Notes: generated by a model from the sequence alone, not told the origin. Counted from the first letter of the stretch, positions 1-8,663 are shown. The stretch: DNA of 8,663 bases from Paraphysomonas bandaiensis (GCA_965644295.1 CBFFRP010000621.1:1-8663); one strand, 5' to 3'. Numbers and translations are program-made.

Positions 1-3000
1 TGCTACCACGAGAACCATAACCACTTACAATTGTCAAACGGCCACCACTCTGGGAAGATGAAGTACCAGCAGACAATGCCAACTCACCACCAGAACCACT
101 GTTGCCAGATCCTACTGTCACATACACTGAACCACCACGACCACTTGAACCAGATCCACTGCCAATGTACAACGAACCACTGTTGCCTCGACTAGAAGTA
201 CCAGTACTCAACACCAATTGACCACTCACACCAGATGATCCAGCATTAGCAGTCAGCAAAGACAACGCTCCACTGGATCGCTCTGAACTGAAACCAGTAA
301 CTATTGCCAAACGACCACCACTCTGGGAAGATGAAGTACCAGCAGATAATGCCAACTCACCACCTGATCCACTGTTGCCAGATCCTACTGTCACATACAC
401 TGAACCACCACGACCACTTGCACCAGATCCACTGCCAATGTACAACGAACCACTGTTGCCTCGACTAGAAGTACCAGTACTCAACACCAATTGACCACTC
501 ACACCAGATGATCCTGCATTAGCAGTCAACAAAGACAATGCTCCACTACTGCCACGAGAACCATAACCACTTACAATTGTCAAACGACCACCACTCTGGG
601 AAGATGAAGTACCAGCAGATAATGCCAACTCACCACCTGATCCACTGTTGCCAGATCCTACTGTCACATACACTGAACCACCACGACCACTTGATGCAGA
701 TCCACTACCAATATACAACGAACCACTGTTGCCTCGACTAGAAGTACCAGTACTCAACACCAATTGACCACTCACACCAGATGATCCAGCATTAGCAGTC
801 AACAAAGACAATGCTCCACTACTTCCCACAGCTCCAGAACCAGTAACTATTGTCAAACGACCACCACTCTCCGATGATGACTCGCCAGCTGACAACATCA
901 ACTCACCACCAGAACCACTGTTGCCGGATCCTACTGTCACATACACTGAACCACCACGACCACTTGATGCAGATCCACTGCCAATGTACAATGAACCACT
1001 GTTGCCTCGACTAGAAGTACCAGTACTCAACACCAATTGACCACTCACACCAGATGATCCAGCATTAGCAGTCAACAAAGACAATGATCCACTGGATCGC
1101 TCCGAACTATAACCAGTGACAATTGTCAAACGACCACCACTCTCCGATGATGACTCGCCAGCAGACAACATCAACTCACCACCTGATCCACTGTTGCCTG
1201 ATCCTACTGTCACATACACTGAACCACCACGACCACTTGCACCAGATCCACTGCCAATGTACAATGAACCACTGTTGCCTCGACTAGAAGTACCAGTACT
1301 CAACACCAATTGACCACTCACACCAGATGATCCAGCATTAGCAGTCAACAAAGACAGCGCTCCACTACTACCCACAGATCCAGAACCAGTTACAATTGTC
1401 AAGCGACCACCACTCTCCGATGATGACTCGCCAGCTGACAACATCAACTCACCACCTGATCCACTGTCACCTGATCCTACTGTCACATACACTGAACCAC
1501 CACGACCACTTGATGCAGATCCACTGCCAATGTACAACGAACCACTGTTGCCCTTACTAGAAGTACCAGTACTCAACACCAATTGACCACTCACACCAGA
1601 TGATCCAGCATTAGCAGTCAACAAAGACAATGCTCCACTACTACCCACAGATCCAGAACCAGTTACAATTGTCAAACGACCACCACTCTCCGATGATGTC
1701 TCGCCAGCTGACAACATCAACTCACCACCTGATCCACTGTTGCCGGATCCTACTGTCACATACACTGAACCACCACGACCACTTGCACCAGATCCACTAC
1801 CAATGTACAACGAACCACTGTTGCCTCTACTAGAAGTACCAGTACTCAACACCAATTGACCACTCACACCAGATAATCCAGCATTAGCAGTCAACAAGGA
1901 CAATGCTCCACTACTTCCCTCAGACCCAGAACCAGTAACAATTGTCAAACGACCGCCACTCTCCGATGATGACTCGCCAGCTGACAACATCAACTCACCA
2001 CCTGATCCACTGTTGCCAGATCCTACTGTCACATACACTGAACCACCACGACCACTTGATGCAGATCCACTACCAATGTACAACGAACCACTGTTGCCTC
2101 GACTAGAAGTACCAGTACTCAACACCAATTGACCACTCACACCAGATGATCCAGCATTAGCAGTCAACAAAGACAATGCTCCACTGCTACCACGAGAACC
2201 ATATCCACTTACAACTGTCAAACGACCACCACTCTCCGAGGATGACTCGCCAGCTGACAACATCAACTCACCACCTGATCCACTGTCACCTGATCCTACT
2301 GTCACATACACTGAACCACCACGACCACTTGCACCAGATCCACTGCCAATGTACAACGAACCACTGTTGCCCTTACTAGAAGTACCAGTACTCAACACCA
2401 ATTGACCACTCACACCAGATGATCCAGCATTAGCAGTCAACAAGGACAATGATCCACTGGATCGCTCTGAACTGAAACCAGTTACAATTGTCAAACGACC
2501 ACCACTCTGGGAAGATGAAGTACCTGCAGATAATGCCAACTCACCACCTGATCCACTGTTGCCAGATCCTACTGTCACATACACTGAACCACCACGACCA
2601 CTTGCACCAGATCCACTACCAATGTACAACGAACCACTGTTGCCTCGACTAGAAGTTCCAGTACTCAACACCAATTGACCACTCACACCAGATGATCCAG
2701 CATTAGCAGTCAACAAAGACAATGCTCCACTGCTGCCACGAGAACCATAACCAGAAACAATTGTCAAACGACCACCACTCTGGGAAGATGAAGTACCAGC
2801 AGATAATGCCAACTCACCACCTGATCCACTGTTGCCAGATCCTACTGTCACATACACTGAACCACCACGACCACTTGATGCAGATCCACTACCAATATAC
2901 AACGAACCACTGTTGCCTCGACTAGAAGTACCAGTACTCAACACCAATTGACCACTCACACCAGATGATCCTGCATTAGCAGTCAACAAAGACAATGCTC

Positions 3001-6000
3001 CACTACTTCCCACAGCTCCAGAACCAGTAACTATTGTCAAACGACCACCACTCTCCGATGATGACTCGCCAGCTGACAACATCAACTCACCACCTGATCC
3101 ACTGTTGCCGGATCCTACTGTCACATACACTGAACCACCACGACCACTTGATGCAGATCCACTACCAATATACAACGAACCACTGTTGCCCTTACTAGCA
3201 GTTCCAGTACTCAACACCAATTGACCACTCACACCTGATGATCCAGCATTAGCAGTCAACAAAGACAATGCTCCACTAGATCGCTCTGAACTGAAACCAG
3301 TAACTATTGTCAAACGACCACCACTCTCCGATGATGACTCGCCAGCTGACAACATCAACTCTCCACCTGATCCACTGTTGCCAGATCCTACTGTCACATA
3401 CACTGAACCACCACGACCACTTGATGCAGATCCACTGCCAATGTACAACGAACCACTGTTGCCTCGACTAGAAGTTCCAGTACTCAACACCAATTGACCA
3501 CTCACACCAGATGATCCAGCATTAGCAGTCAACAAAGACAATGCTCCACTGCTGCCACGAGAACCATAACCAGAAACAATTGTCAAACGACCACCACTCT
3601 GGGAAGATGAAGTACCAGCAGATAATGCCAACTCACCACCTGATCCACTGTTGCCAGATCCTACTGTCACATACACTGACCCACCACGACCACTTGATGC
3701 AGATCCACTACCAATATACAACGAACCACTGTTGCCTCGACTAGAAGTACCGGTACTCAACACCAATTGACCACTCACACCAGATGATCCAGCATTAGCA
3801 GTCAACAAAGACAACGCTCCACTACTTCCCACAGACCCAGAACCAGTTACTATTGTCAAACGACCACCACTCTCCGATGATGACTCGCCAGCTGACAACA
3901 TCAACTCACCACCTGATCCACTGTTGCCAGATCCTACTGTCACATACACTGAACCACCACGACCACTTGCACCAGATCCACTGCCAATGTACAACGAACC
4001 ACTGTTGCCCTTACTAGAAGTACCAGTACTCAACACCAATTGACCACTCACACCAGATGATCCAGCATTGGCAGTCAACAAGGACAATGCTCCACTGGAT
4101 CGCTCTGAACTGTAACCAGTTACAATTGTCAAACGACCACCACTCTCCGATGATGACTCGCCAGCTGACAACATCAACTCACCACCTGATCCACTGTTGC
4201 CAGATCCTACTGTCACATACACTGAACCACCACGACCACTTGCACCAGATCCACTACCAATGTACAACGAACCACTGTTGCCTCTACTAGAAGTACCAGT
4301 ACTCAACACCAATTGACCACTCACACCAGATGATCCAGCATTGGCAGTCAACAAGGACAATGCTCCACTGGATCGCTCTGAACTGTAACCAGTTACAATT
4401 GTCAAACGACCACCACTCTCCGAGGATGACTCGCCAGCTGACAACATCAACTCACCACCTGATCCACTGTTGCCGGATCCTACTGTCACATACACTGAAC
4501 CACCACGACCACTTGCACCAGATCCACTACCAATGTACAACGAACCACTGTTGCCTCGACTAGAAGTACCAGTACTCAACACCAATTGACCACTCACACC
4601 AGATGATCCAGCATTAGCAGTCAACAAGGACAATGCTCCACTACTTCCCACAGATCCAGAACCAGTAACAATTGTCAAACGACCACCACTCTCCGATGAT
4701 GACTCGCCAGCTGACAACATCAACTCACCACCTGATCCACTGTTGCCAGATCCTACTGTCACATACACTGAACCACCACGTCCACTTGCACCAGATCCAC
4801 TGCCAATGTACAACGAACCACTGTTGCCTCGACTAGAAGTACCAGTACTCAACACCAATTGACCACTCACACCAGATGATCCAGCATTAGCAGTAAACAG
4901 GGACAACGATCCACTGCTGCCACGTGTTCCTGAACCAGTTACAATTGTCAAACGACCACCACTCTCCGATGATGTCTCGCCAGCTGACAACATCAACTCT
5001 CCACCTGATCCACTGTTGCCTGATCCTACTGTCACATACACTGAACCACCACGACCACTTGCACCAGATCCACTGCCAATGTACAACGAACCACTGTTGC
5101 CCTTACTAGAAGTACCAGTACTCAACACCAATTGACCACTCACACCAGATGATCCCGCATTAGCAGTCAACAAGGACAATGCTCCACTGGATCGCTCTGA
5201 ACTATAACCAGTTACAATTGTCAAACGACCACCACTCTCCGATGATGACTCGCCAGCTGACAACATCAACTCACCACCTGATCCACTGTTGCCAGATCCT
5301 ACTGTCACATACACTGAACCACCACGGCCACTTGCACCAGATCCACTGCCAATGTACAATGAACCACTGTTGCCTCGACTAGAAGTACCAGTACTCAACA
5401 CCAATTGACCACTCACACCAGATGATCCAGCATTAGCAGTCAACAAGGACAATGCTCCACTGGATCGCTCTGAACTGAAACCAGTTACAATTGTCAAACG
5501 ACCACCACTCTCCGAGGATGACTCGCCAGCTGACAACATCAACTCACCACCTGATCCACTGTTGCCAGATCCTACTGTCACATACACTGAACCACCACGA
5601 CCACTTGCACCAGATCCACTGCCAATGTACAACGAACCACTGTTGCCTCGACTAGAAGTACCAGTACTCAACACCAATTGACCACTCACACCAGATGATC
5701 CCGCATTAGCAGTCAACAAGGACAATGCTCCACTGGATCGCTCTGAACTATAACCAGTTACAATTGTCAAACGACCACCACTCTCCGAGGATGACTCGCC
5801 AGCTGACAACATCAACTCACCACCTGATCCACTGTTGCCAGATCCTACTGTCACATACACTGAACCACCACGACCACTTGCACCAGATCCACTGCCAATG
5901 TACAACGAACCACTGTTGCCCTTACTAGAAGTACCAGTACTCAACACCAATTGACCACTCACACCAGATGATCCAGCATTAGCAGTCAACAAAGACAATG

Positions 6001-8628
6001 CTCCACTACTACCCACAGATCCAGAACCAGTAACTATTGTCAAACGACCACCACTCTCCGATGATGACTCGCCAGCTGACAACATCAACTCACCACCTGA
6101 TCCACTGTTGCCAGATCCTACTGTCACATACACTGAACCACCACGACCACTTGCACCAGATCCACTGCCAATGTACAACGAACCACTGTTGCCTCGACTA
6201 GAAGTACCAGTACTCAACACCAATTGACCACTCACACCAGATGATCCAGCATTAGCAGTCAACAAGGACAATGCTCCACTGGATCGCTCTGAACTATAAC
6301 CAGTAACAATTGTCAAACGACCACCACTCTCCGAGGATGACTCGCCAGCTGACAACATCAACTCACCACCTGATCCACTGTTGCCAGATCCTACTGTCAC
6401 ATACACTGAACCACCACGACCACTTGATGCAGATCCACTGCCAATGTACAACGAACCACTGTTGCCTCGACTAGAAGTACCAGTACTCAACACCAATTGA
6501 CCACTCACACCAGATGATCCAGCATTAGCAGTCAACAAGGACAATGCTCCACTGGATCGCTCTGAACTATAACCAGTAACAATTGTCAAACGACCACCAC
6601 TCTCCGAGGATGACTCGCCAGCTGACAACATCAACTCACCACCTGATCCACTGTTGCCAGATCCTACTGTCACATACACTGAACCACCACGACCACTGGA
6701 TGCAGATCCACTGCCAATGTACAACGAACCACTGTTGCCTCGACTAGAAGTACCAGTACTCAACACCAATTGACCACTCACACCAGATGATCCAGCATTA
6801 GCAGTCAACAAAGACAATGCTCCACTGGATCGCTCTGAACTGTAACCAGTTACAATTGTCAAACGACCACCACTCTCCGATGATGACTCGCCAGCTGACA
6901 ACATCAACTCACCACCTGATCCACTGTTGCCTGATCCTACTGTCACATACACTGAACCACCACGGCCACTTGCACCAGATCCACTGCCAATGTACAACGA
7001 ACCACTGTTACCCTTACTAGAAGTACCAGTACTCAACACCAATTGACCACTCACACCAGATGATCCCGCATTAGCAGTCAACAGGGACAATGCTCCACTG
7101 CTGCCACGTGTTCCTGAACCAGTTACAATTGTCAAACGACCACCACTCTCCGATGATGTCTCGCCAGCTGACAACATCAACTCACCACCTGATCCACTGT
7201 TGCCAGATCCTACTGTCACATACACTGAACCACCACGACCACTTGCACCAGATCCACTGCCAATGTACAACGAACCACTGTTGCCTCGACTAGAAGTACC
7301 AGTACTCAACACCAATTGACCACTCACACCAGATGATCCAGCATTAGCAGTCAACAAGGACAATGCTCCACTGGATCGCTCTGAACTATAACCAGTTACA
7401 ATTGTCAAACGACCACCACTCTCCGAGGATGACTCGCCAGCTGACAACATCAACTCACCACCTGATCCACTGTTGCCGGATCCCACTGTCACATACACTG
7501 AACCACCACGACCACTTGCACCAGATCCACTGCCAATATACAACGAACCACTGTTGCCTCGACTAGAAGTACCAGTACTCAACACCAATTGACCACTCAC
7601 ACCAGATGATCCCGCATTAGCAGTCAACAAGGACAATGCTCCACTGGATCGCTCTGAACTGAAACCAGTAACAATTGCCAAACGACCACCACTCTCCGAT
7701 GATGACTCGCCAGCTGACAACATCAACTCACCACCTGATCCACTGTTGCCAGATCCTACTGTCACATACACTGAACCACCACGACCACTTGCACCAGATC
7801 CACTGCCAATGTACAATGAACCACTGTTGCCTCGACTAGAAGTACCAGTACTCAACACCAATTGACCACTCACACCAGATGATCCAGCATTGGCAGTCAA
7901 CAAGGACAATGCTCCACTGGATCGCTCTGAACTATAACCAGTGACAATTGTCAAACGACCACCACTCTCCGATGATGACTCGCCAGCTGACAACATCAAC
8001 TCACCACCTGATCCACTGTTGCCAGATCCTACTGTCACATACACTGAACCACCACGTCCACTTGCACCAGATCCACTGCCAATGTACAACGAACCACTGT
8101 TGCCTCGACTAGAAGTACCAGTACTCATCACCAATTGACCACTCACACCTGATGATCCTGCATTAGCAGTAAACAGGGACAACGATCCACTGCTGCCACG
8201 TGTTCCAGAACCAGTTACAATTGTCAAACGACCACCACTCTCCGATGATGACTCGCCAGCTGACAACATCAACTCACCACCTGATCCACTGTTGCCAGAT
8301 CCTACTGTCACATACACTGAACCACCACGACCACTTGCACCAGATCCACTGCCAATGTACAACGAACCACTGTTGCCTCGACTAGAAGTACCAGTACTCA
8401 ACACCAATTGACCACTCACACCAGATGATCCCGCATTAGCAGTCAACAAGGACAATGCTCCACTGCTGCCACGCGTTCCTGAACCAGTAACAATTGTCAA
8501 ACGACCACCACTCTCCGATGATGACTCGCCAGCTGACAACATCAACTCACCACCTGATCCACTGTTGCCGGATCCTACTGTCACATACACTGAACCACCA
8601 CGGCCACTTGCACCAGATCCACTGCCAA
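1..8628. repeat. Coding tandem repeat array, 273-bp unit, about 31.6 copies; runs off the left edge of the window
   Basis: CAATTGACC starts at 215, 488, 761, 1034 ... 8132, 8405 (constant 273 spacing, 31 occurrences). Similarity to the consensus ends at 8628 (ACTGCCAA then CAGTAAC instead of TGTACAAC). Confidence 0.99.
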
Positions 8629-8662
8629 CAGTAACATGCAACTGAAACGAAGTACAAGGAAT
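2..8662 (-). CDS. Partial CDS (no stop and no convincing start in window) of a giant Gly/Ser-rich tandem-repeat protein with a 91-aa unit; predicted beta-solenoid or fibrous protein of unknown function. The coding exon may begin at 8641 if 8642-8663 is intron.
   Basis: Manual translation of the reverse complement from 8662 gives IPCTSFQLHVTVGSGSGASGRGGSVYVTVGSGNSGSGGELMLSAGESSSESGGRLTIVTGSGTRGSSGALSLLTANAGSSGVSGQLVLSTGTSSRGNSGSLYIGSGSGAS..., ending ...IVSGYGSRGS at position 2 in the same frame. The unit length is 273 = 91 codons with no indels. No stop was found in the consensus or in the variants I inspected. Most differences between units fall at third codon positions. The hydrophobic/Gly pattern is protein-like. 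Confidence 0.92.
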   Translation of the reverse strand, partial: MPCTSFQLHVTVGSGSGASGRGGSVYVTVGSGNSGSGGELMLSAGESSSESGGRLTIVTGSGTRGSSGALSLLTANAGSSGVSGQLVLSTGTSSRGNSGSLYIGSGSGASGRGGSVYVTVGSGNSGSGGELMLSAGESSSESGGRLTIVTGSGTRGSSGSLSLFTANAGSSGVSGQLVMSTGTSSRGNSGSLYIGSGSGASGRGGSVYVTVGSGNSGSGGELMLSAGESSSESGGRLTIVTGYSSERSSGALSLLTANAGSSGVSGQLVLSTGTSSRGNSGSLYIGSGSGASGRGGSVYVTVGSGNSGSGGELMLSAGESSSESGGRLAIVTGFSSERSSGALSLLTANAGSSGVSGQLVLSTGTSSRGNSGSLYIGSGSGASGRGGSVYVTVGSGNSGSGGELMLSAGESSSESGGRLTIVTGYSSERSSGALSLLTANAGSSGVSGQLVLSTGTSSRGNSGSLYIGSGSGASGRGGSVYVTVGSGNSGSGGELMLSAGETSSESGGRLTIVTGSGTRGSSGALSLLTANAGSSGVSGQLVLSTGTSSKGNSGSLYIGSGSGASGRGGSVYVTVGSGNSGSGGELMLSAGESSSESGGRLTIVTGYSSERSSGALSLLTANAGSSGVSGQLVLSTGTSSRGNSGSLYIGSGSASSGRGGSVYVTVGSGNSGSGGELMLSAGESSSESGGRLTIVTGYSSERSSGALSLLTANAGSSGVSGQLVLSTGTSSRGNSGSLYIGSGSASSGRGGSVYVTVGSGNSGSGGELMLSAGESSSESGGRLTIVTGYSSERSSGALSLLTANAGSSGVSGQLVLSTGTSSRGNSGSLYIGSGSGASGRGGSVYVTVGSGNSGSGGELMLSAGESSSESGGRLTIVTGSGSVGSSGALSLLTANAGSSGVSGQLVLSTGTSSKGNSGSLYIGSGSGASGRGGSVYVTVGSGNSGSGGELMLSAGESSSESGGRLTIVTGYSSERSSGALSLLTANAGSSGVSGQLVLSTGTSSRGNSGSLYIGSGSGASGRGGSVYVTVGSGNSGSGGELMLSAGESSSESGGRLTIVTGFSSERSSGALSLLTANAGSSGVSGQLVLSTGTSSRGNSGSLYIGSGSGASGRGGSVYVTVGSGNSGSGGELMLSAGESSSESGGRLTIVTGYSSERSSGALSLLTANAGSSGVSGQLVLSTGTSSKGNSGSLYIGSGSGASGRGGSVYVTVGSGNSGSGGELMLSAGETSSESGGRLTIVTGSGTRGSSGSLSLFTANAGSSGVSGQLVLSTGTSSRGNSGSLYIGSGSGASGRGGSVYVTVGSGNSGSGGELMLSAGESSSESGGRLTIVTGSGSVGSSGALSLLTANAGSSGVSGQLVLSTGTSSRGNSGSLYIGSGSGASGRGGSVYVTVGSGNSGSGGELMLSAGESSSESGGRLTIVTGYSSERSSGALSLLTANAGSSGVSGQLVLSTGTSSRGNSGSLYIGSGSGASGRGGSVYVTVGSGNSGSGGELMLSAGESSSESGGRLTIVTGYSSERSSGALSLLTANAGSSGVSGQLVLSTGTSSKGNSGSLYIGSGSGASGRGGSVYVTVGSGNSGSGGELMLSAGESSSESGGRLTIVTGSGSVGSSGALSLLTANAGSSGVSGQLVLSTGTSSRGNSGSLYIGSGSASSGRGGSVYVTVGSGNSGSGGELALSAGTSSSQSGGRLTIVSGYGSRGSSGALSLLTANAGSSGVSGQLVLSTGTSSRGNSGSLYIGSGSASSGRGGSVYVTVGSGNSGSGGELMLSAGESSSESGGRLTIVTGFSSERSSGALSLLTANAGSSGVSGQLVLSTGTASKGNSGSLYIGSGSASSGRGGSVYVTVGSGNSGSGGELMLSAGESSSESGGRLTIVTGSGAVGSSGALSLLTANAGSSGVSGQLVLSTGTSSRGNSGSLYIGSGSASSGRGGSVYVTVGSGNSGSGGELALSAGTSSSQSGGRLTIVSGYGSRGSSGALSLLTANAGSSGVSGQLVLSTGTSSRGNSGSLYIGSGSGASGRGGSVYVTVGSGNSGSGGELALSAGTSSSQSGGRLTIVTGFSSERSSGSLSLLTANAGSSGVSGQLVLSTGTSSKGNSGSLYIGSGSGASGRGGSVYVTVGSGDSGSGGELMLSAGESSSESGGRLTVVSGYGSRGSSGALSLLTANAGSSGVSGQLVLSTGTSSRGNSGSLYIGSGSASSGRGGSVYVTVGSGNSGSGGELMLSAGESSSESGGRLTIVTGSGSEGSSGALSLLTANAGLSGVSGQLVLSTGTSSRGNSGSLYIGSGSGASGRGGSVYVTVGSGNSGSGGELMLSAGETSSESGGRLTIVTGSGSVGSSGALSLLTANAGSSGVSGQLVLSTGTSSKGNSGSLYIGSGSASSGRGGSVYVTVGSGDSGSGGELMLSAGESSSESGGRLTIVTGSGSVGSSGALSLLTANAGSSGVSGQLVLSTGTSSRGNSGSLYIGSGSGASGRGGSVYVTVGSGNSGSGGELMLSAGESSSESGGRLTIVTGYSSERSSGSLSLLTANAGSSGVSGQLVLSTGTSSRGNSGSLYIGSGSASSGRGGSVYVTVGSGNSGSGGELMLSAGESSSESGGRLTIVTGSGAVGSSGALSLLTANAGSSGVSGQLVLSTGTSSRGNSGSLYIGSGSASSGRGGSVYVTVGSGNSGSGGELALSAGTSSSQSGGRLTIVSGYGSRGSSGALSLLTANAGSSGVSGQLVLSTGTSSRGNSGSLYIGSGSGASGRGGSVYVTVGSGNSGSGGELALSAGTSSSQSGGRLAIVTGFSSERSSGALSLLTANAGSSGVSGQLVLSTGTSSRGNSGSLYIGSGSGSSGRGGSVYVTVGSGNSGSGGELALSAGTSSSQSGGRLTIVSGYGSRGS

Positions 8663-8663
8663 T
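8642..8663 (-). other. Putative intron 3' end (polypyrimidine tract plus CAG acceptor, phase 0)
   Basis: The minus strand reads AATTCCTTGTACTTCGTTTCAG|TTGCATGTTACTGTTGGC: a pyrimidine-rich tract ending in TTTCAG, 13 nt before the repeat array starts. In-frame translation of the tract (IPCTSFQ) contains Pro and Cys, which are absent from the repeat. Only 22 nt are visible. Confidence 0.45.

What the first reader, a model, noticed from the sequence alone, without database searches (positions are those of the whole stretch)
2..8662. Hidden ~2,880-aa uninterrupted minus-strand ORF missed by the ORF track: giant Gly/Ser repeat protein
Seen: a single stop-free frame across the whole window. The unit is about 53% Gly+Ser (24 G and 24 S of 91 in the SGTRG-type unit) and has no Pro, Cys, Trp or His. 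None of the supplied ORFs corresponds to it. Inference: this is a fragment of a very large structural or extracellular protein of unknown function that continues past position 1.
Basis: partly seen in the sequence, partly recalled or inferred. Interest (0 to 1): 0.8.

Follow-up and report, generated by a model that had tools for sequence, protein, structure and literature searches.

The report
Giant fibre-shaft repeat protein fragment
The whole window is one real coding exon made of about 32 copies of a 91-residue Gly/Ser-rich unit, most likely the hugely expanded shaft of a secreted, phage-tail-fibre-like trimeric filament of a marine protist.

Summary
The minus-strand frame 8662->2 has 0 stops in 2,887 codons, while the other five frames have 46-234. 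It lies on a 273-bp x 31.6 tandem array with no indels. The ORF track missed it only because ORFs that run off both ends are not listed.

It is genuinely coding. Of 84 distinct variants, 50 are synonymous (27% expected, p=2e-10), and pN/pS is 0.28. The repeat also occurs in contigs of transcriptome and polyA metatranscriptome runs.

Pfam and NCBIfam have no family for the unit. The same 91-aa unit, in the same register, does occur in uncharacterised protist proteins. Complete ones read: signal peptide, EGF-like head, beta-repeats, 4-5 units, more beta-repeats, Peptidase_S74 (self-cleaving intramolecular chaperone of phage tail fibres), coiled coil.

An AlphaFold model of three units (pLDDT 79.5) has no intrachain strands. 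It matches S74-protein models (TM 0.92-0.94). In the PDB it weakly matches only phage triple-stranded beta-helix fibres.

Best reading: the shaft of a homotrimeric fibre, here expanded to at least 2,875 aa (roughly 0.2 um). The S74 tail, the head and the trimer are inferred, not seen in the window.

The scan noted this same stretch three times, and S74 fibre genes on other DNA of this genome.

The parts
2..8662 (-). Stop-free reading frame, 2,887 codons, open at both ends of the window
   Evidence: 0 stops here, 46-234 stops in the other five frames
12..8628 (.). Tandem array, period 273 bp (91 codons), 31.6 copies, 93% matches, no indels
146..8608 (-). 31 complete 91-aa units in the register SGRGG...GSGSGA. 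Each is six sub-repeats (five 15-mers and one 16-mer) of pattern G-x-h-x-h-x-s-G followed by a Gly/Ser-rich turn
   Evidence: The unit HMM hits homologues over model positions 2-90
2..145 (-). Partial 32nd unit (48 aa), cut by the end of the window; the gene continues beyond position 1
8629..8641 (-). Degenerate lead-in to the array (L-H-V-T, then VGSGSGA...). Possible first codons of the exon
   Evidence: lies outside the TRF array
8642..8663 (-). Possible 3' end of an intron: pyrimidine-rich tract ending in ...tttcag, with AG at 8643-8642 and the exon starting in phase 0 at 8641. Inference only
   Evidence: sequence. Not testable: zero depth at 8630-8663 in all four runs laid, and the junction 28-mer is absent from metagenome contigs
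8468..8482 (-). Five-codon variable cassette (unit positions 43-47), shown here for unit 1; it recurs every 273 bp. Seven alleles: YSSER x10, FSSER x5, SGSVG x5, SGTRG x4, YGSRG x4, SGAVG x2, SGSEG x1
   Evidence: Cassette pS 0.54, pN 0.31. Whole units cluster by cassette type, so the cassette marks old unit lineages rather than local hypermutation
146..964 (-). Units 29-31, a three-unit block that duplicates units 21-23 (window 2330-3148), with 3, 7 and 12 mismatches per 273 bp
   Evidence: mismatch matrix, lowest mean at lag 8

Best explanation
The window is part of one long exon of a nuclear gene of a marine protist; other notes of this scan call it an apparent stramenopile. The exon encodes the shaft of a secreted, fibrous protein.

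The shaft is built from a conserved 91-residue unit made of six 15/16-residue sub-repeats. Each sub-repeat has one short strand with alternating hydrophobic residues and one Gly/Ser-rich turn. In relatives, 4 to 12 such units lie between an N-terminal signal peptide plus EGF-like head and a C-terminal Peptidase_S74 (ICA) domain with a coiled coil. Here the unit has been amplified to at least 31.6 copies (at least 2,875 aa).

Proposed mechanism, by analogy with phage tail fibres, endosialidase and MYRF. Three chains are brought into register by the C-terminal chaperone domain. They zip up into an intertwined triple-stranded beta-helix with the hydrophobic strand residues in the core. The chaperone then cuts itself off at its Ser-Lys site (S-D-x-R-L/I-K in the relatives). 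This would leave a thin, stiff extracellular filament of roughly 0.2 um. Its surface is 34% Ser/Thr and therefore probably O-glycosylated.

Shown: the open frame, purifying selection, conservation of the unit in other organisms, the association of the unit with S74 and with signal peptides in those relatives, and the repeat's presence in RNA libraries.

Inferred: that this particular gene ends in an S74 domain and starts with a head, trimerisation, the triple beta-helix, glycosylation, length and cellular location.
For: Coding:
- 0 stops against 46-234 in the other frames.
- 50 synonymous of 84 variants, p=2.4e-10, with a third-position excess.
- Pairwise pN/pS is 0.28 overall and 0.22 outside the cassette.
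- No indels.

Homologues:
- 17 short and 16 long proteins match.
- The 91-aa unit HMM matches them end to end in the same register: P0001, P0002, P0006, P0007, P0019, P0020, P0021, P0023 (alignment A1).
- P0020 aligns at 42% identity over 254-272 aa, E about 1e-42.

S74 link:
- PF13884 is found in P0001, P0006, P0010, P0011, P0016, P0019 (x3), P0020, P0022 (x3), P0026 and P0027.
- A conserved S-D-x-R-L-K motif shows in alignment A2.
- The C-terminus of P0006 hits phage tail-fibre PHROGs at E=4.5e-22.

Secretion: P0021 and P0023 have N-terminal signal peptides followed by EGF domains and no TM segment.

Closest DNA relative: L002, at 63% identity, has at least 11.5 units, then a Pro/Ser linker, a neck and GGLxV repeats. 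That order is exactly what precedes S74 in P0006.

Fold:
- The AF2 model of 3 units with an alignment has pLDDT 79.5 and pTM 0.69, and DSSP assigns no intrachain secondary structure. DSSP does assign strands and helices in the control model of P0006.
- The ESM Atlas shape search gives TM 0.92-0.94 to clusters named 'Peptidase S74 domain-containing protein', and TM 0.81 to a phage cluster in which 98% carry PF13884.
- Of 48,161 PDB chains, only five reach Z>=2. Four are hyaluronidase chains (three from streptococcal phage tail fibres, HylP1 2c3f/6wv2 at Z about 4 and HylP3 2wb3; plus Streptomyces Hyal_Sk 4ufq) and one is a phage tailspike depolymerase (Solidus gp83).

Expression: the repeat occurs in contigs of organism-C transcriptomes and of polyA-selected marine metatranscriptomes.

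Precedent: the TLP-12 glycofibril is a trimeric triple beta-helix of O-glycosylated Gly/Ser repeats. Its roughly 20,000-aa candidate proteins end in an ICA domain (bioRxiv 10.1101/2025.09.30.679562).
Against: No S74 domain, head, signal peptide or stop lies in the window, so this gene's architecture rests wholly on relatives.

Some relatives with the unit have no detectable S74 (P0018, P0024, P0025), though most of these are truncated or possibly fused gene models.

The PDB matches are weak (Z about 4, rmsd 5-7 A), Foldseek finds nothing in the PDB, and only a monomer could be modelled. In the second model the same unit in P0006 is poorly predicted (pLDDT about 50).

RNA evidence is from assembled contigs. 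These show neither the strand nor that the signal is RNA rather than carried-over DNA.

The window end 8629-8663 is not covered by any run laid, including the DNA run that holds 83% of the sampled words.
Confidence: 0.66

Rival explanations
1. The protein is real, but each chain folds on its own into a single-chain beta-solenoid rod of about 190 coils of 15-16 residues, like insect antifreeze proteins or bacterial adhesins. It is not a trimer and needs no S74 chaperone.
For: The regular 15/16-residue sub-repeat has one hydrophobic strand and Gly at the turns. 15-residue coils exist in known left-handed beta-helices (own knowledge: spruce budworm antifreeze protein). Some relatives show no S74 domain.
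Against: The AF2 monomer model at pLDDT 79.5 has no intrachain strands at all. In the same pipeline the GGLxV repeats of P0006 fold into intrachain strands at pLDDT 80-92. There is only one clearly hydrophobic strand per 15 residues, too little to fill a solenoid core alone. The only PDB shapes matched are chains of trimeric fibres. The unit is repeatedly found with S74.
Confidence: 0.14
2. The gene is not a cellular gene. It is the fibre gene of an integrated or co-assembled eukaryotic virus: a polinton-like virus, virophage or giant virus. Such viruses are known to carry long repeat proteins ending in Peptidase_S74.
For: S74-terminated modular fibre proteins of up to 3.9 k aa are common in polinton-like viruses (PMC12220804). 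They also occur in Heterosigma akashiwo virus, a stramenopile virus (PMC13659346). Atlas neighbours include phage clusters.
Against: No relative of the unit turns up in IMG/VR viral contigs or in 50,697 phage records. Complete relatives carry a eukaryotic signal peptide and an EGF head that is homologous at E down to 1e-134 to cellular proteins across stramenopiles. P0021 and P0019 lie among cellular-type genes: Kelch, Methyltransf_16, rhomboid, HSP70, Zip. [quoted passage not shown] The window may start with an intron acceptor.
Confidence: 0.07
3. The protein is a largely disordered or silk/mucin-like Gly/Ser-rich secreted polymer, such as an adhesive or a glycan carrier, without a defined rod fold.
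For: 52.7% Gly+Ser and 34% Ser+Thr. The atlas recognition score is low (859). There is no Pfam family.
Against: Hydrophobic i/i+2 positions and Gly at the sub-repeat boundaries are strictly conserved across distant homologues (invariant Gly columns in A1). pN/pS is 0.22 outside the cassette. The AF2 model is confident and has a definite shape shared with other models at TM 0.94.
Confidence: 0.08
4. The array is a non-coding satellite whose open frame is a by-product of copying one stop-free unit.
For: One open 91-codon unit copied 32 times gives a long ORF automatically.
Against: There is a synonymous excess with p=2.4e-10, no stop among 84 variants, and no indels. Protein-level homologues at 42-63% identity occur in other taxa. 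The repeat is present in polyA RNA libraries.
Confidence: 0.02

Closest known systems
TLP-12 glycofibril and its candidate Amoebophrya proteins (CryoSeek, bioRxiv 10.1101/2025.09.30.679562)
   Same: A giant protist protein made almost wholly of short Gly/Ser-rich repeats. The family is linked to a C-terminal ICA/Peptidase_S74 domain. It forms a homotrimeric triple beta-helix stem (solved for TLP-12, inferred here) with a Ser-rich surface that is O-glycosylated in TLP-12.
   Different: TLP-12 has a 12-residue G-S-x-x-S-x7 repeat and is found in alveolates. Here the sub-repeat is 15/16 residues, organised in a conserved 91-residue super-unit, and the relatives are stramenopiles and a green alga. 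No sequence relationship was shown. Glycosylation and trimer state are untested here.
Phage tail fibres and tailspikes with a C-terminal intramolecular chaperone (endosialidase-type Peptidase_S74, PF13884), including streptococcal phage hyaluronidase HylP1/HylP3
   Same: Relatives of the window protein carry PF13884 with the S-D-x-R-L-K motif, and their C-termini hit phage tail-fibre PHROGs. The modelled chain shape matches only chains of such trimeric fibres in the PDB.
   Different: This is a eukaryotic cellular context with signal peptide, EGF head and probable intron. The unit itself has no hit in phage records, in Pfam or in PDB sequences. It is far longer than phage fibres.
MYRF / MrfA (eukaryotic ICA-domain proteins)
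   Same: A eukaryotic use of the phage ICA domain with an upstream triple-beta-helix stalk for trimerisation and self-cleavage (PMC8326128 and PMC3742443, listed).
   Different: [quoted passage not shown] The family here is secreted, has no TM segment or DNA-binding domain, and has a shaft of thousands of residues.
EGF-head / S74-tail fibre proteins P0020, P0021 and P0023 (uncharacterised metagenomic proteins) and the array on L002
   Same: They carry the same 91-aa unit in the same register at 40-63% identity, repeated 4-12 times.
   Different: The window has at least 31.6 units of much higher mutual identity (93%), so the amplification is recent and lineage-specific. Head and tail are not in the window.

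Membership tests
Unnamed 91-aa Gly/Ser unit family (protist fibre shafts) | 91-aa unit of six 15/16-aa sub-repeats in a fixed order, with Gly at the sub-repeat boundaries | tested here: met
   An HMM of the window's units matches P0001, P0002, P0006, P0007, P0019, P0020, P0021 and P0023 over model positions about 2-90. Invariant Gly columns appear in A1. BLASTP against P0020 gives 42% identity, E about 1e-42.
Peptidase_S74 / ICA-chaperoned trimeric fibres | C-terminal PF13884 domain with the catalytic Ser-Lys motif | not testable with these tools
   The window ends inside the array, so this gene's C-terminus is unavailable. In relatives the domain is present: PF13884 at E 1e-6 to 1e-30, with S-D-x-R-L/I-K conserved.
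Peptidase_S74 / ICA-chaperoned trimeric fibres | Triple-stranded beta-helix (or other intertwined trimer) upstream of the chaperone | tested here: inconclusive
   The monomer AF2 model has no intrachain strands. It reaches TM 0.92-0.94 to S74-protein models. The PDB matches are almost all phage tail-fibre or tailspike chains, but only at Z about 4. No multimer prediction was available.
TLP-12-type glycofibril | Dodecapeptide G-S-x-x-S-x7 repeat | tested here: not met
   The sub-repeat period is 15/16 residues, not 12. G-S-x-x-S appears in only one of the six turns (GSGNS).
TLP-12-type glycofibril | Dense O-glycosylation of repeat serines | not testable with these tools
   Only composition is available: 34% Ser+Thr and no N-x-S/T sequon in 2,875 aa.
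Single-chain beta-solenoid (antifreeze or adhesin type) | Intrachain parallel beta-sheets stacking successive coils | tested here: not met
   DSSP assigns no strand in the 273-residue model at pLDDT 79.5. The control model shows DSSP working and intrachain strands in the GGLxV repeats. This is a prediction only.
Stramenopile mastigoneme proteins (Mas/Ocm/SIG1, EGF-like) | Homology of the head to proteins localised on flagellar hairs | not tested
   The head of relative P0021 is homologous to EGF-like proteins of Paraphysomonas, Ectocarpus, Aphanomyces, Pythium and Hydrurales/Ochromonas. None of these is named or documented as a mastigoneme protein in the sources, and there is no head in the window.
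Viral (PLV or giant virus) S74 fibre genes | Location in a viral genome or element | tested here: not met
   No relative was found in IMG/VR or phage records. Relatives lie among cellular-type genes. The window itself has no flanks.

The most novel reading that the evidence does not exclude
The window encodes the shaft of a previously unrecognised class of eukaryotic cell-surface filament. In this reading stramenopiles and some green algae build sub-micron extracellular hairs the way phages build tail fibres. Candidates are the thin terminal filaments of tripartite flagellar hairs, or a free glycofibril. The hair would have an EGF-like head of the stramenopile-wide secreted EGF family and a triple-beta-helix shaft whose length is set by the copy number of a 91-aa unit, and it would be folded and released by a self-cleaving S74/ICA chaperone. 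Unit-number changes and the seven cassette alleles would then tune filament length and surface pattern between strains.
Probability: 0.12. Interest if true: 0.85.

Novelty: new variant of a known kind. Interest (0 to 1): 0.55.

Why it matters
If this reading is right, a protist uses the phage tail-fibre construction principle (an intertwined trimer folded by a self-cleaving C-terminal chaperone) to make a very long extracellular filament from a simple, easily amplified 91-residue module.

It would add a second, sequence-unrelated eukaryotic example next to the TLP-12 glycofibrils seen by cryo-EM in pond water. It would also give that kind of orphan environmental fibril a candidate gene family in stramenopiles and green algae.

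On the practical side, it shows that contigs made only of tandem repeats can hide the largest genes of a genome from ORF callers that ignore open-ended frames.

For this window alone the result is solid but modest. It is a real gene fragment of an uncharacterised, conserved fibre family, and its head, tail and function are still to be found.

Tried and rejected
- Pfam and NCBIfam scans of the unit gave nothing above noise.
- A PDB sequence search gave no hit even at E<=10. Foldseek against the PDB gave none. BFVD gave only weak uncultured-phage hits.
- PHROGs on the unit gave one marginal hit, E=0.009.
- tblastn against phage records found nothing, and IMG/VR held no relative. The BLAST low-complexity filter may hide weak matches.
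- I tried to confirm the putative intron acceptor at 8642 and extend the gene upstream. Reads and contigs of four runs leave 8630-8663 uncovered, and the junction 28-mer is absent from metagenome contigs.
- I tried to tie the EGF head of relatives to named mastigoneme proteins. No source name and no paper mentions the accessions, and a Phytophthora paper on mastigonemes does not mention S74. This remains a lead only.
- The 'hypervariable cassette under diversifying selection' idea is rejected. The cassette has high pS (0.54) as well as pN (0.31), and whole units cluster by cassette type.


Full report
OBSERVATION

Translating the reverse complement from 8662 to 2 gives 2,887 codons without a stop. 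The other five frames contain 46 to 234 stops. The sequence is a single tandem array at 12-8628, with period 273 bp, 31.6 copies, 93% matches and no indels. Composition is even: GC 0.48-0.50 and strong strand asymmetry throughout.

The SGTRG-type unit has 24 Gly and 24 Ser of 91. The 2,875-residue repeat body has no Pro, Cys, Trp or His and is 52.7% Gly+Ser.

The ORF list holds only 61-77-aa plus-strand ORFs, spaced by whole multiples of 273 bp. The tool states that ORFs running off either end are not listed. That is the whole reason the frame was 'hidden'.

IS IT MORE THAN A COPIED OPEN UNIT?

A tandem array inherits an open frame from one open unit, so the length alone is weak evidence. The variation between copies is the real test.
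- Against the consensus there are 84 distinct variants in 72 variable columns, distributed 21/9/42 over codon positions 1/2/3.
- In the open frame 50 of them are synonymous, against 27% expected from all possible single changes (binomial p=2.4e-10).
- None leaves a stop in the real sequence, where 4.4 stop-creating variants would be expected.
- Every other frame shows mostly non-synonymous changes, apart from the wobble-aligned antisense frame.
- Nei-Gojobori pairwise estimates give pS 0.156, pN 0.044 and pN/pS 0.28, or 0.22 outside a five-codon cassette.

The frame is under purifying selection, so this is coding sequence.

ANATOMY

In the register SGRGG...GSGSGA there are 31 complete units (window 146-8608) and a 48-residue partial unit at 2-145. 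Each unit is six sub-repeats, five of 15 residues and one of 16. Each sub-repeat is G-x-h-x-h-x-small-G followed by a Gly/Ser-rich turn.

Amino-acid variation is concentrated at unit positions 43-47, with seven alleles. That cassette has high synonymous as well as non-synonymous divergence (pS 0.54, pN 0.31). Units with the same cassette are also similar over their whole length. The cassette therefore marks old unit lineages that have been shuffled and re-amplified, not a hypermutable loop. One example is units 21-23, which recur as units 29-31 with 3-12 mismatches.

At the upstream end (minus strand) the last 22 bases, 8663-8642, are pyrimidine-rich and end in tttcag. The repeat starts in phase just after this. 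That looks like an intron acceptor, but I could not test it. No contig of the four runs covers 8630-8663, and the junction is absent from the metagenome collection.

RELATIVES

Pfam, NCBIfam and PDB sequences have nothing for the unit. The word-based protein search found 17 short and 16 long relatives.

An HMM of the window's units matches many of them over the full unit, in the same register. Alignment A1 shows the boundary glycines invariant across proteins that are only 40-60% identical.

Many relatives carry Peptidase_S74 (PF13884), the intramolecular chaperone and auto-protease of endosialidase and other phage tail fibres.

The complete proteins P0021 and P0023, and the N-terminally truncated P0020, share this order:
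1. signal peptide;
2. EGF-like Cys-rich head;
3. GGLxV-type beta repeats;
4. four to five 91-aa units (P0020 residues 670-1066, 42% identity to the window, E about 1e-42);
5. further beta repeats;
6. S74;
7. coiled coil.

P0021 is a single 6.8-kb ORF on a 26-kb contig among Kelch, methyltransferase and rhomboid genes. P0019 lies in an NCBI genome assembly next to HSP70 and Zip genes and has three S74 domains.

In the short relatives P0001/P0034, P0006, P0011 and P0014 the unit lies 100-250 residues upstream of S74, whose S-D-x-R-L-K motif is conserved. P0006's tail hits phage tail-fibre PHROGs at E=4.5e-22.

The closest DNA-level relative is L002, a 3.8-kb metagenome contig at 63% identity. 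It has at least 11.5 units in a two-unit period, followed by a Pro/Ser linker, a neck and GGLxV repeats. These align with the pre-S74 region of P0006.

Named sources of relatives include Tribonema minus, Lagenidium giganteum, Nephroselmis pyriformis (taxid 156128) and a Tara-derived marine eukaryote catalogue.

FOLD

AlphaFold2 on three units with alignment A1 gave pLDDT 79.5 and pTM 0.69, with no DSSP secondary structure at all.

As a control, the model of P0006 shows that DSSP works. There the GGLxV repeats form intrachain strands at pLDDT 80-92, while the 91-aa unit region again has none and is poorly predicted (pLDDT about 50).

The shape of the three-unit model matches ESM Atlas models of clusters named 'Peptidase S74 domain-containing protein' at TM 0.92-0.94. 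It matches a phage cluster in which 98% carry PF13884 at TM 0.81.

An exhaustive structural comparison with 48,161 PDB chains returned only five chains at Z>=2. Four are hyaluronidase chains: three from streptococcal phage tail fibres (HylP1 2c3f/6wv2 at Z about 4, and HylP3) plus Streptomyces Hyal_Sk. The fifth is a phage tailspike depolymerase, Solidus gp83. From my own knowledge, HylP1 is a triple-stranded beta-helix.

The scores are low and only a monomer could be modelled. The fold is therefore 'consistent with one chain of an intertwined trimer', not shown.

EXPRESSION

The repeat's 31-mers occur in 20 public runs of 12 studies. Eight are recorded as RNA, including transcriptomes of one organism and polyA-selected marine metatranscriptomes.

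Laid on 8370-8663, contigs of those RNA runs cover the repeat at 95-100% identity and bridge unit junctions. Contigs cannot show strand or exclude carried-over DNA.

MECHANISM PROPOSED

By established knowledge of ICA/S74 proteins (Schwarzer 2007 and Schulz 2010, as cited; MYRF papers PMC3742443 and PMC8326128), the C-terminal chaperone trimerises, templates the folding of the upstream triple beta-helix and then cleaves itself off.

Applied here, three chains of at least 2,875 residues would form a thin rod. The two or three hydrophobic residues of each 15-residue sub-repeat would sit in the core, and a Ser/Thr-rich surface would be exposed.

Using the rise per residue of the solved TLP-12 trimer (216 residues per chain per 14 nm), the part in the window alone would be about 0.19 um long. 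This is a rough figure.

TLP-12 is the closest functional precedent. It is a pond-water glycofibril whose trimeric triple-beta-helix stem is made of O-glycosylated G-S-x-x-S-x7 repeats. Its candidate roughly 20,000-aa Amoebophrya proteins end in an ICA domain. The window's repeat differs in period (15/16 against 12), in super-unit organisation and in taxon, so it is not a member of that family.

RIVALS

- A monomeric solenoid (0.14) is disfavoured by the models and by the S74 association.
- A viral fibre gene (0.07) is plausible in principle, since polinton-like and giant viruses carry S74 fibres. It is disfavoured by signal peptides, cellular-type neighbours, the stramenopile-wide EGF head family and the absence of viral hits.
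- A disordered Gly/Ser polymer (0.08) and a non-coding satellite (0.02) are contradicted by the conservation pattern.

NOVELTY AND SCORE

The construction principle is known in phages, MYRF and, very recently, protist glycofibrils. The 91-aa unit family, with its EGF head and S74 tail in stramenopiles and green algae, is not in Pfam, and I found no paper on it. I rate it a new variant of a known kind.

Other notes of this scan already flagged S74 fibre genes on other DNA of the same genome, and this same stretch was noted three times. For this window the head, tail, trimer state, location and function are all inferred. Interest: 0.55.

Noticed in passing
window 8629-8663: The last 35 bases at the upstream end have zero depth in all four runs laid, including the DNA run that holds 83% of the sampled words. 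At 8628 the contigs only continue into the next repeat unit. The unique boundary may be strain-specific, filtered out, or an assembly end artefact.
   Followed up: partly
L002:3590-3640: In the related metagenome contig the reading frame shifts by one base at a run of six G. The same GGLxV-type repeats continue in the next frame, so this is probably a homopolymer sequencing error rather than a real stop.
   Followed up: partly
P0019 and P0022 (L003:10001-22648): Relatives with three internal Peptidase_S74 domains, each followed by more 91-aa-type units. The adjacent called genes abut in the same direction. These look like giant fibre polyproteins that would be cut into several fibres.
   Followed up: partly
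P0002 (359 aa, 2.3-kb ENA contig): The N-terminal 160 residues are 91-aa units. The C-terminal half has cytosine-5 DNA methyltransferase-like motifs (PPCQ, ENV). This may be a chimeric contig, a read-through gene call or a real fusion.
   Followed up: no
P0024 (Lagenidium giganteum, 1705 aa): About 490 residues of units at the N-terminus are fused to transportin/importin-13-like TPR domains. This is probably a merged gene model.
   Followed up: no
window 146-8608: There is no N-x-S/T sequon in 2,875 residues despite 92 Asn and 34% Ser/Thr. All three Asn of the unit are followed by x-Gly. Any glycosylation would therefore have to be O-linked.
   Followed up: partly
window 146-3694 versus 3695-8608: The downstream 13 units (19-31) are more diverged from the consensus (90-96% identity) and carry the YGSRG/SGAVG/SGSEG cassettes and the A23/T28/Q32 variant. 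The upstream 18 units are 93-97% identical to the consensus. The array seems to have grown by recent amplification at its 5' side.
   Followed up: partly
P0013 (591 aa, Logan contig): A signal-peptide protein with about 20 similar 15-residue 'G-N-S-G-x-h-x-h-x-T-G' repeats, 33% identity over 87% of the query, no S74 and a different C-terminal domain. It may represent a separate lineage that uses the same sub-repeat.
   Followed up: no
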